Origin: Lytechinus pictus
Lineage: Eukaryota
Length of the DNA stretch: 64,000 nt
Assembly (NCBI RefSeq): GCF_037042905.1
Contig: NC_087256.1
Location: 3,968,001 to 4,032,000, forward strand
Direction of reading: 5' to 3'
Numbering within the stretch: position 1 is the first letter of the stretch; each line of letters starts with the position of its first letter. The notes beneath the pieces were generated by a model. That model was not told the origin of the DNA. It did not search any database and saw nothing but the letters and a program-made list of their open reading frames with translations. Both the position numbers and the translations under genes were made by a program. Below, one piece after another: positions 54 through 62,930 of the stretch.

Positions 54-2482
54 CTGCAGGGGCTGTGGAAGTTTATTCCACTTTTTGTAGCCGTGCTGAG
101 GCATGTCTATCTTCTTCTTCCCTCGTTCTTTCTTGCTCTTTTGATCTTTAGTTTTCTTCTTGCTCTCAGTGTGCCAAGATAAAGGATCTTGAGGGAAACT
201 CTTCCTTGTTGAGACCTGATACACGTTGCCAGAATCCAGGTAGAGATTTGAATCACCGGGCTGATGAATCAACTGTGCACCTGCGGTTTGGTGATGTAAT
301 AATGGGAATAGAATGGAGAGCATGTTATGTTTCAAAGTGAATATATTTAGACAGGATAAAATCATTCATGTTCTTCAATAGTCCACGGTTATGTGATTCC
401 TTTTATAAATTTATTTGTTATATGAATTTATGCCATCCTACGGTAACTTCTACGGAATCCTAGATAATAATTTCCAGTTAAACATTGTTATCATGAAAGG
501 TACCAATTGGCTGGCCGAGTAACTTTAATAGTAATTTCAATGAATGAAGTGAAGGTTTTTGAAATAAAATATGCAAGTATCACTCTGTAGCCTCTACTAC
601 ACATTGTCAAAAGTATACTGTCAGACCATAATACTTAACCTAATACATCTTACAAATGGTGCAGACATAAACTGAATCAATGAAAAGTTCTTCTCTATCT
701 TTCTTCTACTGTCCTAGTGTCCTACATTGCAAAAATTATCAAATGGTTAGAGTTTTTATTTATCCACAAACATAGAAATTTAAGAATGACTGTAAATGTA
801 ATATTTTTATCAAGTTGGACTCTCATCCTCATATGCAAAAACATATTTCAGTTTTAAAGGTGTGATGTAATCAGGGACTTCTAACACCGATAAACAGTAC
901 CTACCAAGCAACCATTCTTGCTCAAATTGGTTGTGTGTATCAAGCATCTTATCACCAATGGCTGGATTCATCACATCCTTGAGAGTAGGAGGTGGCTTGG
1001 GTTTACGACGGAATACTTGGATGTCTTGAGCAGTTGTGTTGATGGCACCTGCAAGAAAACATGCCATCATTAACCAATTTTTAATTCAATATAACGATGT
1101 ACTCAAATGTACAATTGCCCTGTATTTGTAATGACAATGACATAAAGGTTATCTTGATTATGAAATCCTATCTTATACAAACAAGATCATAGTGTCTGAA
1201 TTCCAAAAAAAAGATTGCATATTAGAAAGTTTGCATTCTTTGATCACAATTAGAAAAAGTTCAATGAAAAATAAGATTCTTGTTTCATCTTAAAATATAT
1301 GTAACAAGCAAAATGTGATTGTGGCTGACGTTTGGTGAATAGTAATCAGGAAGCAGGAACAGACAGTATCTTGATTTACACTAATTTACTCGAAAGGTAC
1401 ATAATAAAAATGTCAAGAGATTTAAGAGCTTTTTTTAATTCAATCTAAAAATTAAAAAAAAATTAATTAAATATGAGAGGATTACCGAGACTATCAATGG
1501 CAAGTTGTCTTTGTTTCCGTCTGACTCCACCAGGAAGACGATAGAATGATGCTAAAGGTTGTGTATTGATGTCTTCCTCATCATTTTCATCCTCACCACC
1601 TTCTCCTTCTTTCTTATCCTTGGCACTAGAACTTTTTCTACCCCCAGAAAGCACTGGTTTCTGTTTCTTTGAGGTTCTGCTATCTGCTCTTTGTTCTGTT
1701 GGCTCAGCTAGCCCAGTCTCACTCATGCTGGTGTCATCTCTGATAAGAGTATCAAGCTGTGAAGACTCTCCAAACTTCTCAACGAGAAGCTTGGTTAGTC
1801 TGTCCTTCTGTGGACCTTGAGGTGTTCGCTCGTTGACGATCCATCTAGCTGTCGCTTTGCTAAGGTTCATCAAGACATGAGAATCCCAATTCTGAGATTC
1901 TTTTGTTCTCGTCTTTGAATCATGCTGGGAATCTGTGTTGATCTCTACTTCCTCTTCTAATTCATTCTCTTGCTCTGTTTCAGTGAGGAATGCATTTTTC
2001 CCTTTGAGAACAGTTCCAGCTTCAGACACAATTTCATCATCTCTATCAGGAATTATCTTTTTCTTTTTGGGCTGGAGTGGCTTAAGCTTGTGTTCTGATA
2101 CGGTAGTGATGTGGCAAGGAGCATGTTTCTTTTCGTACCCACGCTGGTTATGCCTTCCAACAGTACCAATCTTTTTCAGTGGTTTCTTCTTCACAATTCC
2201 TTTGGAATCAAAAGTTCCTTTCAGATCTACCTTGTTGTATGGAAGTGTATGAGCTGCATGTTTGCGAATTACGGCTTCACTGAAGAGGAGATCAGCGCTT
2301 ATCTTCTTCACATAGTCATGATGGATTTTACCCTGTGCATCTTGGGTACGAGTTGGAGGTAAACTTTGTGACAGGAAGGAGAATTGGCTTTTGAGTTTTG
2401 ATTCATCAGACCCAACCTGTGGTACCTTTACTCTATCGGCACAGGGGAAGAGAAGTGGCCGAGACAGGCTGTCAGTCTCCAT
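54..2482 (-). CDS. HEATR4: HEAT repeat-containing protein 4-like, N-terminal exons (gene continues beyond the left edge)
   Basis: Exons 2510-1486 (ATG at 2482), 1048-905 and 280-54, all GT-AG and phase-compatible (phase 1). The peptides WDSHVLMNLSKATARWIV, PLASFYRLP, HNQFEQEWLLGAQLIHQPG and GYKKWNKLPQP recall, in the same order, the N-terminal region of vertebrate HEATR4 (recognised from memory, not searched). Confidence 0.75.
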
Positions 2483-4228
2483 CACCAATCCTCAAGCTTT
2501 ACCAAGACTTCTAGATAAAGAAAAGAAAAGCAAATAAGTATTTATAAGTAAAACCATAAACAGTATTTGACCTTTCTTGCACTCAAACCTTTTACTAGTT
2601 TACTGCAGGAATTAACAATACAATAAAAACTAAACTTACAATTTTAGTGAAAACCTGAATTTCATGAGAACAAGGATAACCAAGGATACCAAGAAAAAAT
2701 ATCAAAGAAAAGCGGGTAAAAACAGCAAAAGATAAAGAAAGAAGACAAAAAGAAAAGACAAGGTCAGGGAAGAAAAAAAATAAAATAAAATACAGATCTT
2801 GTTATAGAAAAACAATGCCACCATTTCTGGGGTCTACATGTATATGATAAGTTGCCCAAAGTCTGCACATACACGTATCTGCGCCATTCTAATAAAAGAA
2901 GATACACAATGATTGCAAACTTTACACCTGAAATACATACAGATATTCATTAAAAAATCTGACTCAAAATGGTGGAGAAATATTGAATTTCAGGCATATC
3001 ATGTGACGGCCTCAAATTGCAGCTTTTCTCATTGAAAACCCTGAATCATGGGGCATCATCTTTTTGTTCAATCTGAAAATGACTAGCCAAAATATTTTCT
3101 TTGAAAATCGTATATTTCTCTCAACTTTTTATGACATTTTTTGCACACTTACTCATAAGAATATAAAGAACATTAATTGAAAATTTTTGTGGAATAAAAA
3201 ATAAATTCATGTTTAATCTTAAGTTAAATTTTGGTGCACAAACCTAACTTTAACTTTGCCCCCCCCCCCTTTATACAGTATTGATATTTTTTTAATCAGT
3301 TGAATTACACATAAATTAAAACAAAAGTCAAAGAAATAAAAGAAAAGATTGTGTAATTGTAAATTAGAATAGATCTAATTTCCTGCAGCCTTCAATCTAG
3401 CAACAAGCTGAACACCAACGAAACGTCAACTTCAAATCTTCACAACCAATGCCATGGAAAATAAGTGGATGAACAATTGAATGATGAATGAATGAGAAAA
3501 GTTAGTATTAAAGACTCAAAAGTCAAATCCACTAACATTAATATTTAATAACAGCTGCACCTTCTACTTTTTTGCATTGCATTAGACTAGCCTAGGGCCT
3601 AGACAAAACACTAATCTATACGTAGGGTGTCTGAAGCCACACTGAAAAGTGTCGGCATAAAACAGGCTGATTTAGGGGAAAATATGGCACATTTTTTCGG
3701 GGAAGTTCAGGCTACTAGAAAAATGTGATCTGAATTGATTATCAACTTGTGTTTGGCATGTATGGAAAGAGAAAATTCAGGGGCTTCTTTTGACAGTAAG
3801 GACAAGTTTATATGATCATTTTAAATAAGGATTTAGAGATAAATTGCAAACCCTTATTTTTGTGTGTGGTGAGATTGCCATTTCTCCATGCGTTTTCTAT
3901 GGGAAAATGAAATTTCTGTTTTGCACAATTTTTTCACTTTGTCGCAATTTTTCATTGTGATCTGGTTTCCAAATCTTTATAAAAATCATACCATCAGATA
4001 GAGCATAAAAACTCCTATTGGACTCTTTATGGACAAGTTTTTGGCATTAATAATAAATTTATAACAGCTCTCGGAAGCTAAAAATTTGGATTTGTGTGTG
4101 TCCATTTCTTAACTAGGGCCTACAGTCTATGGCAGAGAAATGCTGAAAATTGACCTAATTTCATTCTTCTTTTTTGCAGCCAATAATTGGATTTTTTTCA
4201 AAAATGTTACATTTCTGTCAGTCTGAAG

Positions 4229-5107
4229 CACTCCTAGTACCAATGAGGTCCAAACATTAACATGTATGGACCTCATAGGCGACAATGCGTTAAAAACAGG
4301 TTAGAACTTCTAAACGTACTGTTTCCTGCACCCAAGTATGATATTACTCCCAAAATATGAGTTTTGTCCTCGTTTGTTTATCATTTATTAAAAGATTGCC
4401 CATTAAATATATTCCTATTCCTAATTTGAATTTAATAAAATAAAGGGAAACTTACATTTGAGTCATTTTTCGATCTTTTTTTGGCAGTCAGTCCGGTCAC
4501 CGTCGAGTGCGATCAAAGCGGTATGAAGCTGATTTTCAGATCACGTGATACGTGTGGTCATCACCTGATCAATCGACTATCCTTTTTTAAAGACCGCAAC
4601 AATTATAAATTTTATTATAAAATATATATAGAATGAATAATTGCATGATATTATATATATTTCTACAATTAAAAATATTTTGTGATATGAATTTAATATT
4701 TGACGTAAAAATCGCTATTTAACAAAATATTTATTTAAAATAAAAAATCAAACAAAATAAAAACGCCTTGGACACAGTGCAAAAAACCTAACAATTTGGC
4801 CGCGTTCTTAACAACTATCGTAAGGGGCGCTCTATTTATAAATAAAGTTGCATATGTAGTTGTCTACCGCGACAGGAACAGCCGCAGAATTGAAGCCAGA
4901 AGCGTGGGAAATTGCCAGAAAATTCAAGAAAAGAACCGGTGAGTACCGATTTAACAGTACTAATTTATTAAGTAACATTTATTGAATCATTACAAGATTT
5001 ATTTTTTAGTAAAACAAAGCTTAGTTCTAAGCTAGGGCGGCCCAAATGCGCGTGAGTGGAGTCCCAGTTTATTAGCACGGGTAAGTATTGGGGTGTCGCC
5101 TAGAGTG
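4229..5107 (+). mobile_element. 879-bp non-autonomous element, copy A (CACTC...GAGTG ends, 8-bp TSD)
   Basis: TSD GTCTGAAG at 4221-4228 and 5108-5115; homologous along its length to copy B. Confidence 0.85.
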
Positions 5108-5156
5108 GTCTGAAGGTCGTTTCTCTTCAAATTCAGAAAGAAAATGTGATATTTTC

Positions 5157-6033
5157 CACTCTAGGCGACACCCCAATACTTACCCGTGCTAATAAACTGG
5201 GACTCCACTCACGCGCGTTTGGGCCTCCCTAGCTTAGAACTAAGCACTAATTTCACCTTAAAAACTAAATCTACAAGGTATGTATAATCTATTTATAAAT
5301 TTAATAATGTTTAATCGGTACTCACCGGTTCTTTTGTTGCATTTTCAGACCATTTCTCACAATTCTTCGTAAATATTTGCGGCAAATTTTGTCGCCATAG
5401 ACAGCTTAGCGTCCATCTTTATTGATAAATGGAGCGCCCTTTACGATAGTTGTTAATGCCGCGGAGAAATCGTTAGGCATTTTGGCCTGTGTTCAAGGCG
5501 TTCTTTCTGTTTTATTTTTATATTGAAGATTGTGCATTTGTTGAATAGCGCCGTCTACGTCAGGTATGAGATCGAATGTATAAATACACTCTTCCAAAAT
5601 AATTATGATTCCGACCTGGCGCTGTTTAACTTCAATCTCTTTCACCTAAATTAGCGATGAATGCTAGCATTATAAAATATATATTATTAACGTCTGACGA
5701 AAAGAATAACCAACCGATCAGCTGACGAGAACGCGAATCACGTGATCTTCATATCAGCTTCGATCGCGAGTCAGAAGAGAGGAGCAGTTGCCCAGAAAAT
5801 CAGGAAAAAGCCGTGAAAATGTAAGTTCCCCTTCATTTCTTTCAATTTTTTTTATTGCTAACAATGTATTCAATTAGTGAGATCGAAATGTAATGATTAG
5901 ACAGTACGATAGCTTGTAGTTTTGATAAAATACAAAAATAATCATCTTCACAAAGATTTCTGACACAAAATACTACTGATGTCGCCTATGAGGTCCATAC
6001 ATGTAATGTTGGACCTCATTGGTACTAGGAGTG
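5157..6033 (-). mobile_element. 877-bp non-autonomous element, copy B (diverged relative of copy A, opposite orientation)
   Basis: TSD ATATTTTC at 5149-5156 and 6034-6041; ends near-identical to copy A. Confidence 0.85.
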
Positions 6034-6541
6034 ATATTTTCTTGAAATAAGAAAAAAAAAAATTTCTCCAGACACCCTACTATACGCCCGAATTGGGCGA
6101 GGTGATTACACAGGCATGCCCGCACTAACACACTACCGTCGGTGAATGGGGATTATAGTAAAGAATTTTCAGAATGTCACTTATTGTCAGAAATTGTTAA
6201 ATAAATCCCCAGAAACGACGGTTATCCGAACCCTTTTCACTCCTAACATCATTCTGAATGTGTGGGACTCGGCAAATCAGGACGCTGACAGTGACAGTGA
6301 TGCAGACAAATGCAACATTTTAACGCGTGTGAAAACCTATTGATGAATAGATCGACAGAATACTACAAACTCTACCATTAATTTCCCATCCTGATTAGAT
6401 ATTACCGATATGATACCGAGAAATTCATAAATAAACTCACCGAATTATGTCTGTTTGCGTCTTGTTTCCATGGACAAATTTTGAATGTAGGAGAAAGAAA
6501 TACCGTGATTTGAGACCGATAGTACGGTATCTCTGAGGTAT

Positions 6542-55332: not shown

Positions 55333-55507
55333 NNNNNNNNNNNNNNNNNNNNNNNNNNNNNNNNNNNNNNNNNNNNNNNNNNNNNNNNNNNNNNNNNNNN
55401 NNNNNNNNNNNNNNNNNNNNNNNNNNNNNNNNNNNNNNNNNNNNNNNNNNNNNNNNNNNNNNNNNNNNNNNNNNNNNNNNNNNNNNNNNNNNNNNNNNNN
55501 NNNNNNN
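55333..55507. other. N gap within a (CAT)n tract
   Basis: Run of N. Confidence 0.99.
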
Positions 55508-61613: not shown

Positions 61614-62930
61614 TCATGGAAACTCATCAATTCCTTGTTCACCATGAGGTTGGAGTCCTCTCTCTAAAAGTTTCTTATTCCGTGTCTTCTCTTCCTCTTG
61701 ATTCTTTAGCTGTTCTGCTCTTTGTGCTTCAAGGATCTCATCAATAGAAACTTCCTCCAAATTGTGATTATTCTCATTCTCTGTATCCTGAAATATATGA
61801 ATAAAGGAATAAAATTTATGTTATAATTCATCATAACATCATCATCATAATCATGATCTCCAGTTCACCAACACTATCACCCCCCCCCCCAATCATCATG
61901 ACATCATCGCCAACATCATCATCACTTTGCCATTANNNNNNNNNNNNNNNNNNNNNNNNNNNNNNNNNNNNNNNNNNNNNNNNNNNNNNNNNNNNNNNNN
62001 NNNNNNNNNNNNNNNNNNNNNNNNNNNNNNNNNNNNNNNNNNNNNNNNNNNNNNNNNNNNNNNNNNNNNNNNNNNNNNNNNNNNNNNTACTGCCATTCAT
62101 CATGATTACCAGTCTCCATCACCACCACCACCACCATCATCACCATCATCATCATTATCATCATCATATGCATTATCATCAACAACGATATCACCAAATT
62201 TTGGTTTAAAAATAGTGAGATAACTTACTACTTCACCAAGAAGGACCACATTCTCTCCTCTGACAACAAAAACACCTCTTGGTATGTCTCCATACTGTTT
62301 GCCTACATGTATCCTCTCAATGGTACGATGTAACACAAGATTGGCTGCCAAGATAAGAAGAGATACCACAAAAGAAAGTTAATTTCAATGTGTATATGAT
62401 TTGAAAAATTGAAATGTCTAAGGCTATTTTCTTAGATGATAGTTTACTATTTTTTTTTAATTGAGAGTAGGAAAATGAAGAATGTAATAAAGTAGAGTTG
62501 AAGTAGAAAAATGAGAAGGTGGATGAGTAAACAAGGAGGGAGGAGAAGGAGGGTAAGAAAATGAGGAACCAAGGAGGGAAGGAAGGAGGGTAGAAGAAGA
62601 ATATTCTTCTACATATTATGCAGCAGGCATAATAATATTCTTCTTCATATTATGCAGCAGGTGAATGAGCAAAGTGGTTCAAAGTTACAAACATGTGGTA
62701 AAAGGGATCATGATAATGCACAAGATAGTTTCATAAACTATAAAAAGCATGAATACTTTGCAAACCAATCTTTACTTGACAGTTTATTAAAAAAATAAAA
62801 TGCCTTGATAATTGTATAAAATTATAAAGTCAGACGTCCACAAGAATTGACTTATACTTACCGAATTGATCAATACTTCTAAGAATACCTATCAGGGTCC
62901 TTCCATCTCTTAGGACAACCAGAAGCTTTT
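61614..62930 (-). CDS. LSM1: Sm-like protein LSm1, last three coding exons (first exon not found in the window)
   Basis: Exons 62930-62862 (KLLVVLRDGRTLIGILRSIDQF), 62344-62229 (ANLVLHRTIERIHVGKQYGDIPRGVFVVRGENVVLLGEV) and 61787-61614 (DTENE...VSIDEILEAQRAEQ...EFP*); phases fit. Confidence 0.95.
61936..62087. other. N gap within a (CAT/CAC)n tract in an LSM1 intron
   Basis: Run of N. Confidence 0.99.

What the first reader, a model, noticed from the sequence alone, without database searches (positions are those of the whole stretch)
4229..6033. The conserved blocks in the twin elements look like a mobile bidirectional promoter with outward-facing first exons
Seen in both copies: E-box GATCACGTGAT (4539, 5737), TGACGTA (4701, 5556), AACGCCTTG.ACACAG, AACAACTATCGTAA.GGGCGCTC.ATTTAT, and three consensus 5' splice sites. 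These are AAAT|GTAAGT pointing to one end (minus ~4454, plus 5821), and AAGAACCG|GTGAGT (plus 4939, minus ~5325) and GCACGG|GTAAGT (plus 5081, minus ~5183) pointing to the other. Two of the donors follow short GC-richer exon-like stretches and precede AT-rich intron-like DNA. Inference: a central divergent promoter fires toward both ends and leaves open donors that could splice into flanking genes. Three donors are in sense with, and upstream of, the HEATR4 acceptor at 2511. The two inward transcripts would be convergent and could form dsRNA.
Basis: partly seen in the sequence, partly recalled or inferred. Interest (0 to 1): 0.75.

Follow-up and report, generated by a model that had tools for sequence, protein, structure and literature searches.

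The report
Transposon pair carrying its own promoter
The 1.8-kb "palindrome" is two separate copies of a small gene-less jumping element in an intron; the family carries its own promoter and a short leader exon whose splice donor is used in RNA, but not to feed the gene it sits in.

Summary
The motifs are real. 4229-6033 is two independent, tail-to-tail insertions of one non-autonomous DNA-transposon family. Copy A is 4229-5107 (+) and copy B is 5157-6033 (-). Each has its own 8-bp target duplication, and they lie 33 bp apart. The copies are 63% identical overall, with perfect termini and eight perfect internal or terminal blocks. These blocks hold the E-box, the TATA-adjacent block and all four GTRAGT motifs; the CRE is conserved but outside them.

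- In run X24, transcription diverges from the AT-rich core (4578-4711), which is itself almost unread.
- The E-box-side leader (4456 to about 4590, minus strand) is read 30:1 in sense.
- Twenty-three reads break exactly at its AAAT|GTAAGT donor and continue into an exon that is not in this window.
- The mirror exon in copy B is also read in sense.

Three claims are not supported:
- No read joins any element donor to the gene's acceptor at 2511/2510.
- The 5081/5183 donors sit in the conserved terminal block, which explains their conservation.
- The dsRNA idea is untested.

Most likely this is a transposon-borne promoter, leader and donor module, of the same kind as HelibatN3. This scan earlier noted a similar module on other DNA of this genome (s1-320125) and read this same stretch as twin insertions (s1-320049).

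The parts
4221..4228 (.). Target-site duplication of copy A, left (GTCTGAAG)
   Evidence: Identical 8-mer at 5108-5115. The joint 4220->5108 skips 887 nt, with 8 letters fitting both sides.
4229..5107 (+). Copy A, an 879-bp non-autonomous TIR element (5' CACTCCTAG ... CTAGAGTG 3')
   Evidence: The borders are fixed by the TSD and by empty-form reads.
5108..5115 (.). Target-site duplication of copy A, right
5116..5148 (.). 33-bp piece of the pre-insertion host sequence between the two copies
   Evidence: Reads and an RNA contig join 4228 to 6031 with this spacer between them, differing at 2-3 positions (tables 5 and 5c).
5149..5156 (.). Target-site duplication of copy B, left (ATATTTTC)
   Evidence: Identical 8-mer at 6034-6041
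5157..6033 (-). Copy B, an 877-bp member of a diverged subfamily, inverted
   Evidence: A run X9 contig ends at 6033 and continues into a different flank (table 7).
6034..6041 (.). Target-site duplication of copy B, right
4229..4284 (+). Outer terminal block, perfect in both copies apart from the hairpin loop (mirror 5980-6033). It holds the hairpin ATGAGGTCCA...TGGACCTCAT and the motif TAGGCGACA, which recurs at the inner end.
4450..4455 (-). Donor GTAAGT of the E-box-side leader exon; the exon ends at 4456. This donor is used in RNA.
   Evidence: run X24 has 23 reads with about 99 loose letters immediately left of 4456. Two X1 RNA contigs span exactly 4456-4601.
4456..4590 (-). Non-coding leader exon of copy A. 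The upstream limit is approximate and the TSS is inferred. It contains the 12-nt palindromic E-box at 4538-4549.
   Evidence: the X24 bin 4444-4577 has depth 23.2 (minus-strand RNA) against 0.78. Neighbouring bins have 1.07 and 0.3. DNA contigs of X9 are flat across these bins (13-27).
4603..4622 (-). TATA-like stretch upstream of the leader exon, partly conserved in copy B (5668-5685)
   Evidence: Its function is inferred.
4578..4711 (.). AT-rich core from which transcription diverges; it holds the CRE-like TGACGTA at 4701-4707
   Evidence: X24 depth is 0.3/0 here. RNA is minus-strand to the left and plus-strand to the right (3.85 and 3.74 against 0). GC is 0.05-0.15.
4808..4840 (+). Conserved block TTAACAACTATCGTAA..GGGCGCTC plus the TATA-like TATTTATAAATA
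   Evidence: Plus-strand reads already cover 4736 (table 3), so this TATA is not the only start.
4929..4951 (+). 23-nt perfect block holding the donor-like CCG|GTGAGT (4939-4944). The block is itself an inverted repeat.
   Evidence: Use as a donor was neither shown nor excluded.
5019..5107 (+). Inner terminal block, 98% identical between the copies. It holds GTGAGT at 5052 and GTAAGT at 5081.
   Evidence: The conservation is explained by its role as a transposon end.
5019..5245 (.). Near-perfect hairpin with a stem of about 89 bp, created by the two inner ends
   Evidence: -194 kcal/mol, z -26; 38.3 bits against Rfam mir-16 in sensitive mode only.
5690..5820 (+). Mirror leader exon of copy B (E-box at 5737-5747), followed by the donor GTAAGT at 5821-5826
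   Evidence: X24 bins 5650-5783 and 5784-5917 have 8.0 and 6.25 (plus-strand RNA) against 1.1 and 0.02.
5320..5325 (-). Copy B counterpart of the GTGAGT donor-like site
   Evidence: There is no strand bias in RNA here.
2510..2511 (-). Acceptor of the host gene's large exon (the intron ends at 2511)
   Evidence: RNA contig and reads are on the minus strand only.

Best explanation
Two diverged members of one family of about 0.88-kb gene-less cut-and-paste transposons inserted independently, tail to tail and 33 bp apart. The family has an 8-bp target duplication and a 9-bp imperfect TIR, so it is hAT-like. The insertion site is an older repeat inside an intron of a minus-strand gene.

The family carries an internal RNA polymerase II promoter module. 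It consists of an AT-rich core with a CRE-like site and TATA-like stretches. The core is flanked on one side by a non-coding leader exon of about 120-145 nt, which contains a palindromic E-box and ends in AAAT|GTAAGT. On the other side is a weaker, oppositely directed transcribed stretch ending in CCG|GTGAGT.

Shown: mobility, block conservation, sense-biased transcription of the leader in both subfamilies, and use of the leader's donor.

Inferred: transcription starts inside the element. The module is the promoter, leader and first-intron boundary inherited from the autonomous parent, kept in the deletion derivatives. Spliced reads come from a master or another copy, not from this locus. At this locus the module does not feed the host gene.
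For: Structure:
- Each copy has its own TSD, and a joined empty form exists.
- Termini are perfect over 56 and 61 nt while the interior drops to 30-60% identity.

RNA, all:
- Strand control: the host exon 2300-2511 is read only by first-mate-on-plus reads, so that class marks minus-strand RNA.
- In X24 the leader bin has 23.2 against 0.78. The intron-side bin has 1.07 and the core 0.3. DNA contigs of X9 are flat (13-27) across the same bins, so the RNA profile is not a mapping artefact.
- 23 reads break exactly at the exon|GT border, at 4456.
- Two X1 RNA contigs, one with 0 and one with 6 mismatches, both span 4456-4601 at summed depth about 205, against about 40 for the neighbouring contigs.
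- Reads carry at least three sequence versions (4465, 4480, 4556 and a 1-nt deletion at 4499), all in sense. This argues for an intrinsic promoter rather than read-through.
- The copy B mirror exon is read 7:1 or better in sense.
- None of the 17 substitutions and 6 indels listed inside the copies falls in a perfect block. These blocks cover 22% of the sequence.

Neither copy has a good acceptor at the leader's upstream edge.
Against: - No pile-up of read starts was reported (table 6), so the TSS is not demonstrated. An upstream acceptor near 4580 is not strictly excluded.
- Only one read-laying run was possible, and weaker loose ends (163 rows) were not shown. Use of the other donors is therefore unknown.
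- Plus-strand RNA is weak (depth about 4) and already covers 4736, upstream of the predicted TATA at 4829.
- Copy B shows no strand bias on its inner side.
- In X1 the copy-B-type sequence is covered evenly at about 200, including its 'promoter'. That looks like read-through or high copy number.
- No autonomous partner was seen, so 'inherited from the transposase gene' is inference.
- The splice partner is known only as a 30-nt consensus with 0.8 agreement.
Confidence: 0.55

Rival explanations
1. Captured host promoter. The interior of the family is a transduplicated head-to-head host promoter with both first exons. Most spliced reads come from the parental host gene, or from one copy that has become a gene's first exon.
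For: - The conservation pattern looks like phylogenetic footprinting of a real promoter: transcription-factor sites, TATA and exon ends are kept while the UTR bodies drift.
- The termini are perfect while the interior is diverged, as expected if ends and filling have different histories.
- The loose-end consensus is dominated by one partner (agreement 0.8) that starts with CTC ATG..., like an exon 2 carrying a start codon.
Against: - An X1 RNA contig matches copy A 146/146, and at least three versions are expressed, so the reads are not from a single parent locus.
- GC is low and there is no CpG-island character.
- No parental locus could be searched for.
Confidence: 0.17
2. The blocks are cis-acting transposition or protein-binding sites, and the donor-like hexamers are incidental. 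Four of the eight blocks are palindromes or hairpins, so they could be transposase or host-factor binding sites. The RNA would then be passive.
For: - The 12-nt E-box palindrome, the inverted-repeat block 4929-4951, GCTTAG..CTAAGC at 5019-5032 and the terminal hairpin.
- The 5052 and 5081 hexamers lie in the terminal block.
- Copy-B-type sequence is covered evenly in X1.
Against: - The break is exact at the exon|GTAAGT border in 23 stranded reads and two contigs.
- The sense bias is 30:1 across several source copies.
- The exon/core/intron depth contrast is absent from DNA contigs.
- The loose letters do not continue with the conserved AACTTAC block, so they are not unspliced variants.
Confidence: 0.13
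3. The twin promoters fire outward and inward, their minus-strand donors splice into the host gene's acceptor at 2511/2510, and the convergent inward transcripts form regulatory dsRNA.
For: - Three minus-strand donors are upstream of, and in sense with, a genuine strong acceptor.
- Any transcript crossing 5019-5245 would fold into a stem of about 89 bp.
- X23 shows low coverage on both strands there.
Against: - No joint from any element donor to 2510/2511 appears in two deep RNA runs or in the RNA contigs.
- The gene's contig continues into an upstream exon outside 2512-6300.
- Most leader reads differ from copy A at 3-4 positions, so they probably come from elsewhere.
- There are no small-RNA data.
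Confidence: 0.05

Closest known systems
HelibatN3, a bat Helitron that captured the NUBPL promoter, a short first exon and its splice donor (PMC4778049; PMC4224331)
   Same: A gene-less mobile element carries a Pol II promoter and a short leader or first exon ending in a donor. This allows transcripts that start in the element and splice to a downstream acceptor. It was amplified as a family.
   Different: - Here the carrier is a cut-and-paste TIR element with 8-bp target duplications, not a rolling-circle Helitron.
- The module appears bidirectional.
- No parental host gene is known.
- Chimeras with host genes have not been shown, only a used donor.
Ds-type deletion derivatives of Ac and other hAT elements (from general knowledge; not tested here)
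   Same: Non-autonomous copies keep both ends plus the parent's promoter and leader region. They have an 8-bp target duplication and short TIRs. Transposon-internal splice sites are used in RNA.
   Different: - No autonomous partner or transposase was found.
- The TIR CACTCCTAG does not fit the usual hAT YARNG start.
- The donors point outward from a central core rather than helping to splice the element out.
Human L1 5'UTR sense and antisense promoter, which produces chimeric transcripts (from general knowledge)
   Same: An internal bidirectional promoter in a mobile element, whose transcripts splice from element-borne donors into other exons.
   Different: L1 is a retrotransposon whose promoter must travel with its RNA. 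A DNA transposon has no such need, which makes retention in non-autonomous copies less expected.
   Same: The same genome and the same idea: a gene-less element in which every copy carries a promoter, leader and donor module.
   Different: It lies on a different stretch, and I could not check whether it is the same family. That follow-up obtained no RNA evidence, whereas here a donor is seen in use.

Membership tests
hAT superfamily (non-autonomous member) | 8-bp target-site duplication | tested here: met
   GTCTGAAG flanks copy A and ATATTTTC flanks copy B. The joint has 8 ambiguous letters.
hAT superfamily (non-autonomous member) | Short TIRs with the usual YARNG start, and the nTnnnnAn target preference (consensus recalled from general knowledge) | tested here: inconclusive
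   The TIR is only CACTC(C)TAG, 8-9 nt and imperfect, and CACTC does not fit YARNG. One TSD fits nTnnnnAn fully and the other at one of the two positions.
hAT superfamily (non-autonomous member) | Autonomous partner encoding a hAT transposase with matching ends | not testable with these tools
   There is no other copy or transposase in the window, and the genome itself cannot be searched. Other 8-bp-TSD superfamilies (P, Zisupton, Merlin-like) are not excluded.
Single foldback / palindromic element | One insertion, with one target duplication flanking the whole palindrome | tested here: not met
   The outer flanks differ (GTCTGAAG against ATATTTTC). Each half has its own TSD, and 33 bp of host DNA lies between them.
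Promoter-plus-donor-carrying transposon (exon-trap type, as HelibatN3) | Transcription in a fixed sense from inside the element | tested here: met
   30:1 strand bias on the leader and a near-silent core upstream, from several source copies. The exact TSS is not mapped.
Promoter-plus-donor-carrying transposon (exon-trap type, as HelibatN3) | Element-borne splice donor used in RNA | tested here: met
   23 split reads and two contig ends exactly at 4456. The other donors are unknown.
Promoter-plus-donor-carrying transposon (exon-trap type, as HelibatN3) | Chimeric transcripts with host-gene exons | tested here: inconclusive
   The splice partner is not in the window, and there is no joint to the host acceptor at 2511/2510. 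The partner could be a host exon elsewhere or a transposase exon.
Promoter-plus-donor-carrying transposon (exon-trap type, as HelibatN3) | Identifiable parental host gene from which the promoter was captured | not testable with these tools
   No access to the rest of the genome.
Bidirectional promoter | Divergent stranded transcripts from a shared core | tested here: inconclusive
   In X24, copy A shows a clean switch from minus to plus across 4578-4711, but the plus side is weak (about 4). Copy B shows only the outer side. X23 is mixed.
mir-16 microRNA precursor (Rfam RF00254) | Score above the gathering threshold with Rfam's own filters, and a conserved hairpin at a single gene locus | tested here: not met
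   38.3 bits against 36.5 in sensitive mode only, and no hit in gathering mode. The hairpin exists only because two transposon ends happen to face each other.

The most novel reading that the evidence does not exclude
The family is a natural, transposase-spread bidirectional promoter and exon trap. Selection on master copies keeps an E-box/CRE-responsive core and outward-facing leader exons with open donors even in gene-less copies. New insertions can then give nearby sea-urchin genes new first exons in either orientation. Tail-to-tail pairs like this one create long hairpins that could seed small-RNA control of the family.
Probability: 0.18. Interest if true: 0.7.

Novelty: new member of a known kind. 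Interest (0 to 1): 0.42.

Why it matters
Mobile elements that carry a working promoter and an open splice donor can hand ready-made first exons to genes. The best-documented animal DNA-transposon case is the bat Helitron HelibatN3. A cut-and-paste family doing the same in a sea urchin, possibly in both directions, would give a tractable embryo system for measuring how often such insertions rewire genes. At this locus, however, the element is silent with respect to its host gene. The module may simply be the parent transposon's own promoter and leader, which would be ordinary.

Tried and rejected
1. A single foldback element: rejected, because each half has its own TSD.
2. Empty-form reads as proof of insertion polymorphism: withdrawn. 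The surrounding 3622-6185 sequence is itself a repeat with RNA contig depth 400-1000 against 17 for the gene exon. The empty form may therefore be a paralogue rather than an allele.
3. Splice partner in the window: not found with up to 3 mismatches or with blastn-short.
4. More family copies: none in the window. There were no exact matches in the metagenome collection (two blocks) or the viral collection. The earlier-findings search by sequence was blank.
5. Known RNA families: only the mir-16-like score on the accidental hairpin.
6. ORFs: nothing longer than 52 aa lies within the elements (the only longer ORF in the scanned span lies beyond copy B), and the leaders have no conserved ATG.
7. 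Pfam on the 341-aa host exon gave no family, so the name HEATR4 is unverified. The large protein search was not spent on it, because an exon-sized query cannot reach full-length relatives.
8. The bacterial promoter/terminator scan is irrelevant, except that it exposed the inverted repeat in the 4929-4951 block.
9. The literature search found no description of this family.

Full report
**1. What is there**

The stretch 4229-6033 reads as a 1.8-kb inverted repeat, but it is not one element.

- Copy A runs 4229-5107 on the plus strand (879 bp). It is flanked by the direct 8-mer GTCTGAAG at 4221-4228 and 5108-5115.
- Copy B runs 5157-6033 on the minus strand (877 bp). It is flanked by ATATTTTC at 5149-5156 and 6034-6041.
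- 33 bp of host sequence (5116-5148) lies between them.

Reads and an RNA contig join 4228 directly to 6031, with that spacer between them carrying 2-3 substitutions. A second joint, 4220->5108, has 8 letters that fit both sides. These are the uninterrupted form of the target. So two members of one family inserted independently, tail to tail. This agrees with the sibling note s1-320049.

Each unit has a short imperfect TIR, CACTCCTAG at one end and CACTC-TAG at the other. The motif TAGGCGACA occurs near both ends, and the outer end holds a hairpin.

An 8-bp duplication with short TIRs points to a hAT-like cut-and-paste element. The TIR start does not fit the usual hAT consensus, and no transposase is available, so I do not file it firmly.

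A DNA contig of another run ends exactly at 6033 and continues into a different flank (table 7). The family is therefore dispersed.

**2. Checking the observation**

The two copies are only 63% identical over all alignment columns, and about 30-47% in 4289-4430. They contain perfect runs of 25, 25, 11, 12, 16, 23, 19 and 61 nt. The E-box, the block next to the TATA-like stretch and all four GTRAGT hexamers per copy lie in these runs. TGACGTA is conserved but not in a run of 10 nt or more.

GTRAGT occurs four times per copy, where the rest of the window predicts about 0.8.

The exon-like stretches are 0.50-0.57 GC, next to stretches of 0.15-0.25.

None of the 17 substitutions and 6 indels that one search lists inside the copies falls in a perfect run, although the runs cover 22% of the sequence. 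This is weak support, because only the best-supported rows were shown.

The wording "twin elements" is right, and "palindrome" would be wrong.

**3. RNA evidence (one call allowed)**

Runs X23 and X24 are raw, stranded, rRNA-depleted RNA reads of the window's species label. X1 is a set of RNA contigs; its gene contig is spliced at 2511, so it is RNA. X9 is a set of DNA contigs under another label.

The host exon 2300-2511 is a minus-strand ORF with a strong acceptor, the intron ending at 2511. It is read only by first-mate-on-plus reads (27.8 against 0 in X24). That class therefore marks minus-strand RNA.

X24 depths across copy A, given as minus-strand RNA / plus-strand RNA:

| Bin | Depth (minus / plus) |
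|---|---|
| 4310-4443 | 1.07 / 0 |
| 4444-4577 | 23.2 / 0.78 |
| 4578-4711 | 0.3 / 0 |
| 4712-4845 | 0 / 3.85 |
| 4846-4979 | 0 / 3.74 |

The X9 DNA contigs cover the same bins evenly (13-41). The RNA profile is therefore not a mapping artefact of family conservation.

- Twenty-three X24 reads align rightward from 4456 and carry about 99 loose letters to its left. Position 4456 is the last exon base before the minus-strand GTAAGT (4455-4450).
- The loose letters do not continue with the conserved AACTTAC block, so these are not unspliced variants.
- Two X1 contigs, one identical to copy A and one with six differences, both span exactly 4456-4601. Their summed depth is about 205, against about 40 for the neighbouring contigs.
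- The reads carry at least three sequence versions (4465, 4480, 4556 and a 1-nt deletion at 4499), all in sense.
- The mirror exon of copy B (about 5690-5820) is read as plus-strand RNA at 8.0 and 6.25, against 1.1 and 0.02.

So the E-box-side leader exon is transcribed in a fixed sense in both subfamilies, from several source copies, and its donor is used.

**4. What the RNA does not show**

- The joints table is complete. It holds no junction from 4456, 5184 or 5326 to 2510/2511, and none from any other proposed donor to a site inside 2300-6300.
- The gene's own contig has 101 further upstream letters that do not lie in 2512-6300. The pair therefore sits in an intron, and the gene uses another upstream exon.
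- The partner of the 4456 donor has the consensus CTCATGCTCTGGTCTGGTGCCATAGGCTTG in sense. It is absent from the whole window.
- Most leader reads differ from copy A at three or four places. The spliced RNA therefore comes from another copy, a master element, or possibly a parental gene.
- No pile-up of read starts was reported, so the TSS is inferred. The inference rests on the sharp drop into the AT-rich core, on a TATA-like stretch conserved in both copies (4603-4622 and 5668-5685), and on the lack of a credible acceptor at the leader's upstream edge.
- The plus-strand side is weak and already covers 4736, upstream of the TATA-like 4829-4840.
- Copy B shows no strand bias on its inner side.
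- Loose ends with fewer than about 20 reads were not listed. Use of 4938|4939, 5080|5081 and 5820|5821 is therefore unknown.

**5. Other reasons for conservation**

The 5052 and 5081 hexamers lie in the 61-nt perfect inner terminal block. The termini are perfect while the interior is not, which is what transposase recognition or recent end-sharing would give. These two "donors" need no splicing explanation.

The block around 4939 is an inverted repeat, and the E-box is a 12-nt palindrome. GCTTAG..CTAAGC and the terminal hairpin are also palindromic. A reading as protein-binding or hairpin sites therefore remains open for some blocks. It cannot explain the stranded, exactly bounded split reads at 4456.

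**6. Mechanism I commit to (confidence 0.55)**

The family is a deletion derivative that kept its parent's Pol II promoter, its non-coding leader and the start of the first intron. The promoter shows some divergent activity.

Copies are transcribed from within, and the leader can splice to whatever acceptor follows. In the master element that would be the transposase exon. The partner's early ATG fits this, but it also fits a host exon 2.

Here, in an intron and 1.9 kb upstream of a strong acceptor in sense, no such splicing is detectable.

Rivals:
- Captured host head-to-head promoter: 0.17.
- Purely cis-acting or binding sites with incidental hexamers: 0.13.
- The remainder is unassigned.

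**7. Comparison with known systems**

In function, the closest case is HelibatN3. This Helitron captured the NUBPL promoter, six codons and a donor, and drives spliced chimeric transcripts (PMC4778049). The L1 sense/antisense promoter and Ds-type derivatives are further analogues, cited from general knowledge.

This case differs in three ways: the carrier is a TIR element with an 8-bp TSD, the module appears bidirectional, and no parental gene is known.

Sea-urchin repeats are widely transcribed in embryos, and young DNA transposons are reported there (PMC8615465). I found no description of this family.

That the genome is a sea urchin is taken from earlier notes, not tested here. The name HEATR4 is also unverified.

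**8. Twin arrangement**

The facing inner ends make a stem of about 89 bp (-194 kcal/mol, z -26) in any transcript that crosses them, including the host pre-mRNA. Whether small RNAs arise from it could not be tested.

**Verdict**

This is a new member of a known kind, of moderate interest.

Noticed in passing
window 6185-6225: A 41-nt core is read at RNA depth of about 100. It has 250-400 loose ends on each side in X23 and X24, and 'goes back 41' joints with 20 letters between them. It looks like one unit of a tandem repeat of about 61 nt that is abundantly transcribed elsewhere in the genome.
   Followed up: no
window 3622-4228 and 6034-6185 (with spacer 5116-5148): The sequence that received both insertions is itself a transcribed repeat. 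RNA contig depth is 400-1000, against 17 for the gene exon. Loose ends at 3622 are heterogeneous, and all reads differ from the window at 3654, 3743 and 3869. The 'empty site' reads may therefore be paralogues rather than alleles.
   Followed up: partly
window 2939-3047: Another short repeat, transcribed on both strands, with sharp loose-end borders at 2939 and 3047 in all four runs.
   Followed up: no
window 5061-5203: The hairpin made by the two transposon inner ends scores 38.3 bits on Rfam mir-16 (gathering score 36.5) in sensitive mode. It gives nothing with Rfam's own filters. This is probably a chance resemblance on an accidental hairpin.
   Followed up: partly
window 5108-5156: Two insertions of the same family landed 33 bp apart in opposite orientation. 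This suggests a target hot spot or local hopping.
   Followed up: no
window 4229-4284 against 5094-5107: The outer end reads like the inner end (CACTC-TAGGCGACA) with about 42 extra nt inserted between CACTCC and TAGGCGACA, and this extra stretch contains the hairpin. It may be an old nested micro-insertion or an end duplication that became fixed in the family.
   Followed up: partly
window 55333-55507 and 61936-62087: Two runs of N.
   Followed up: no
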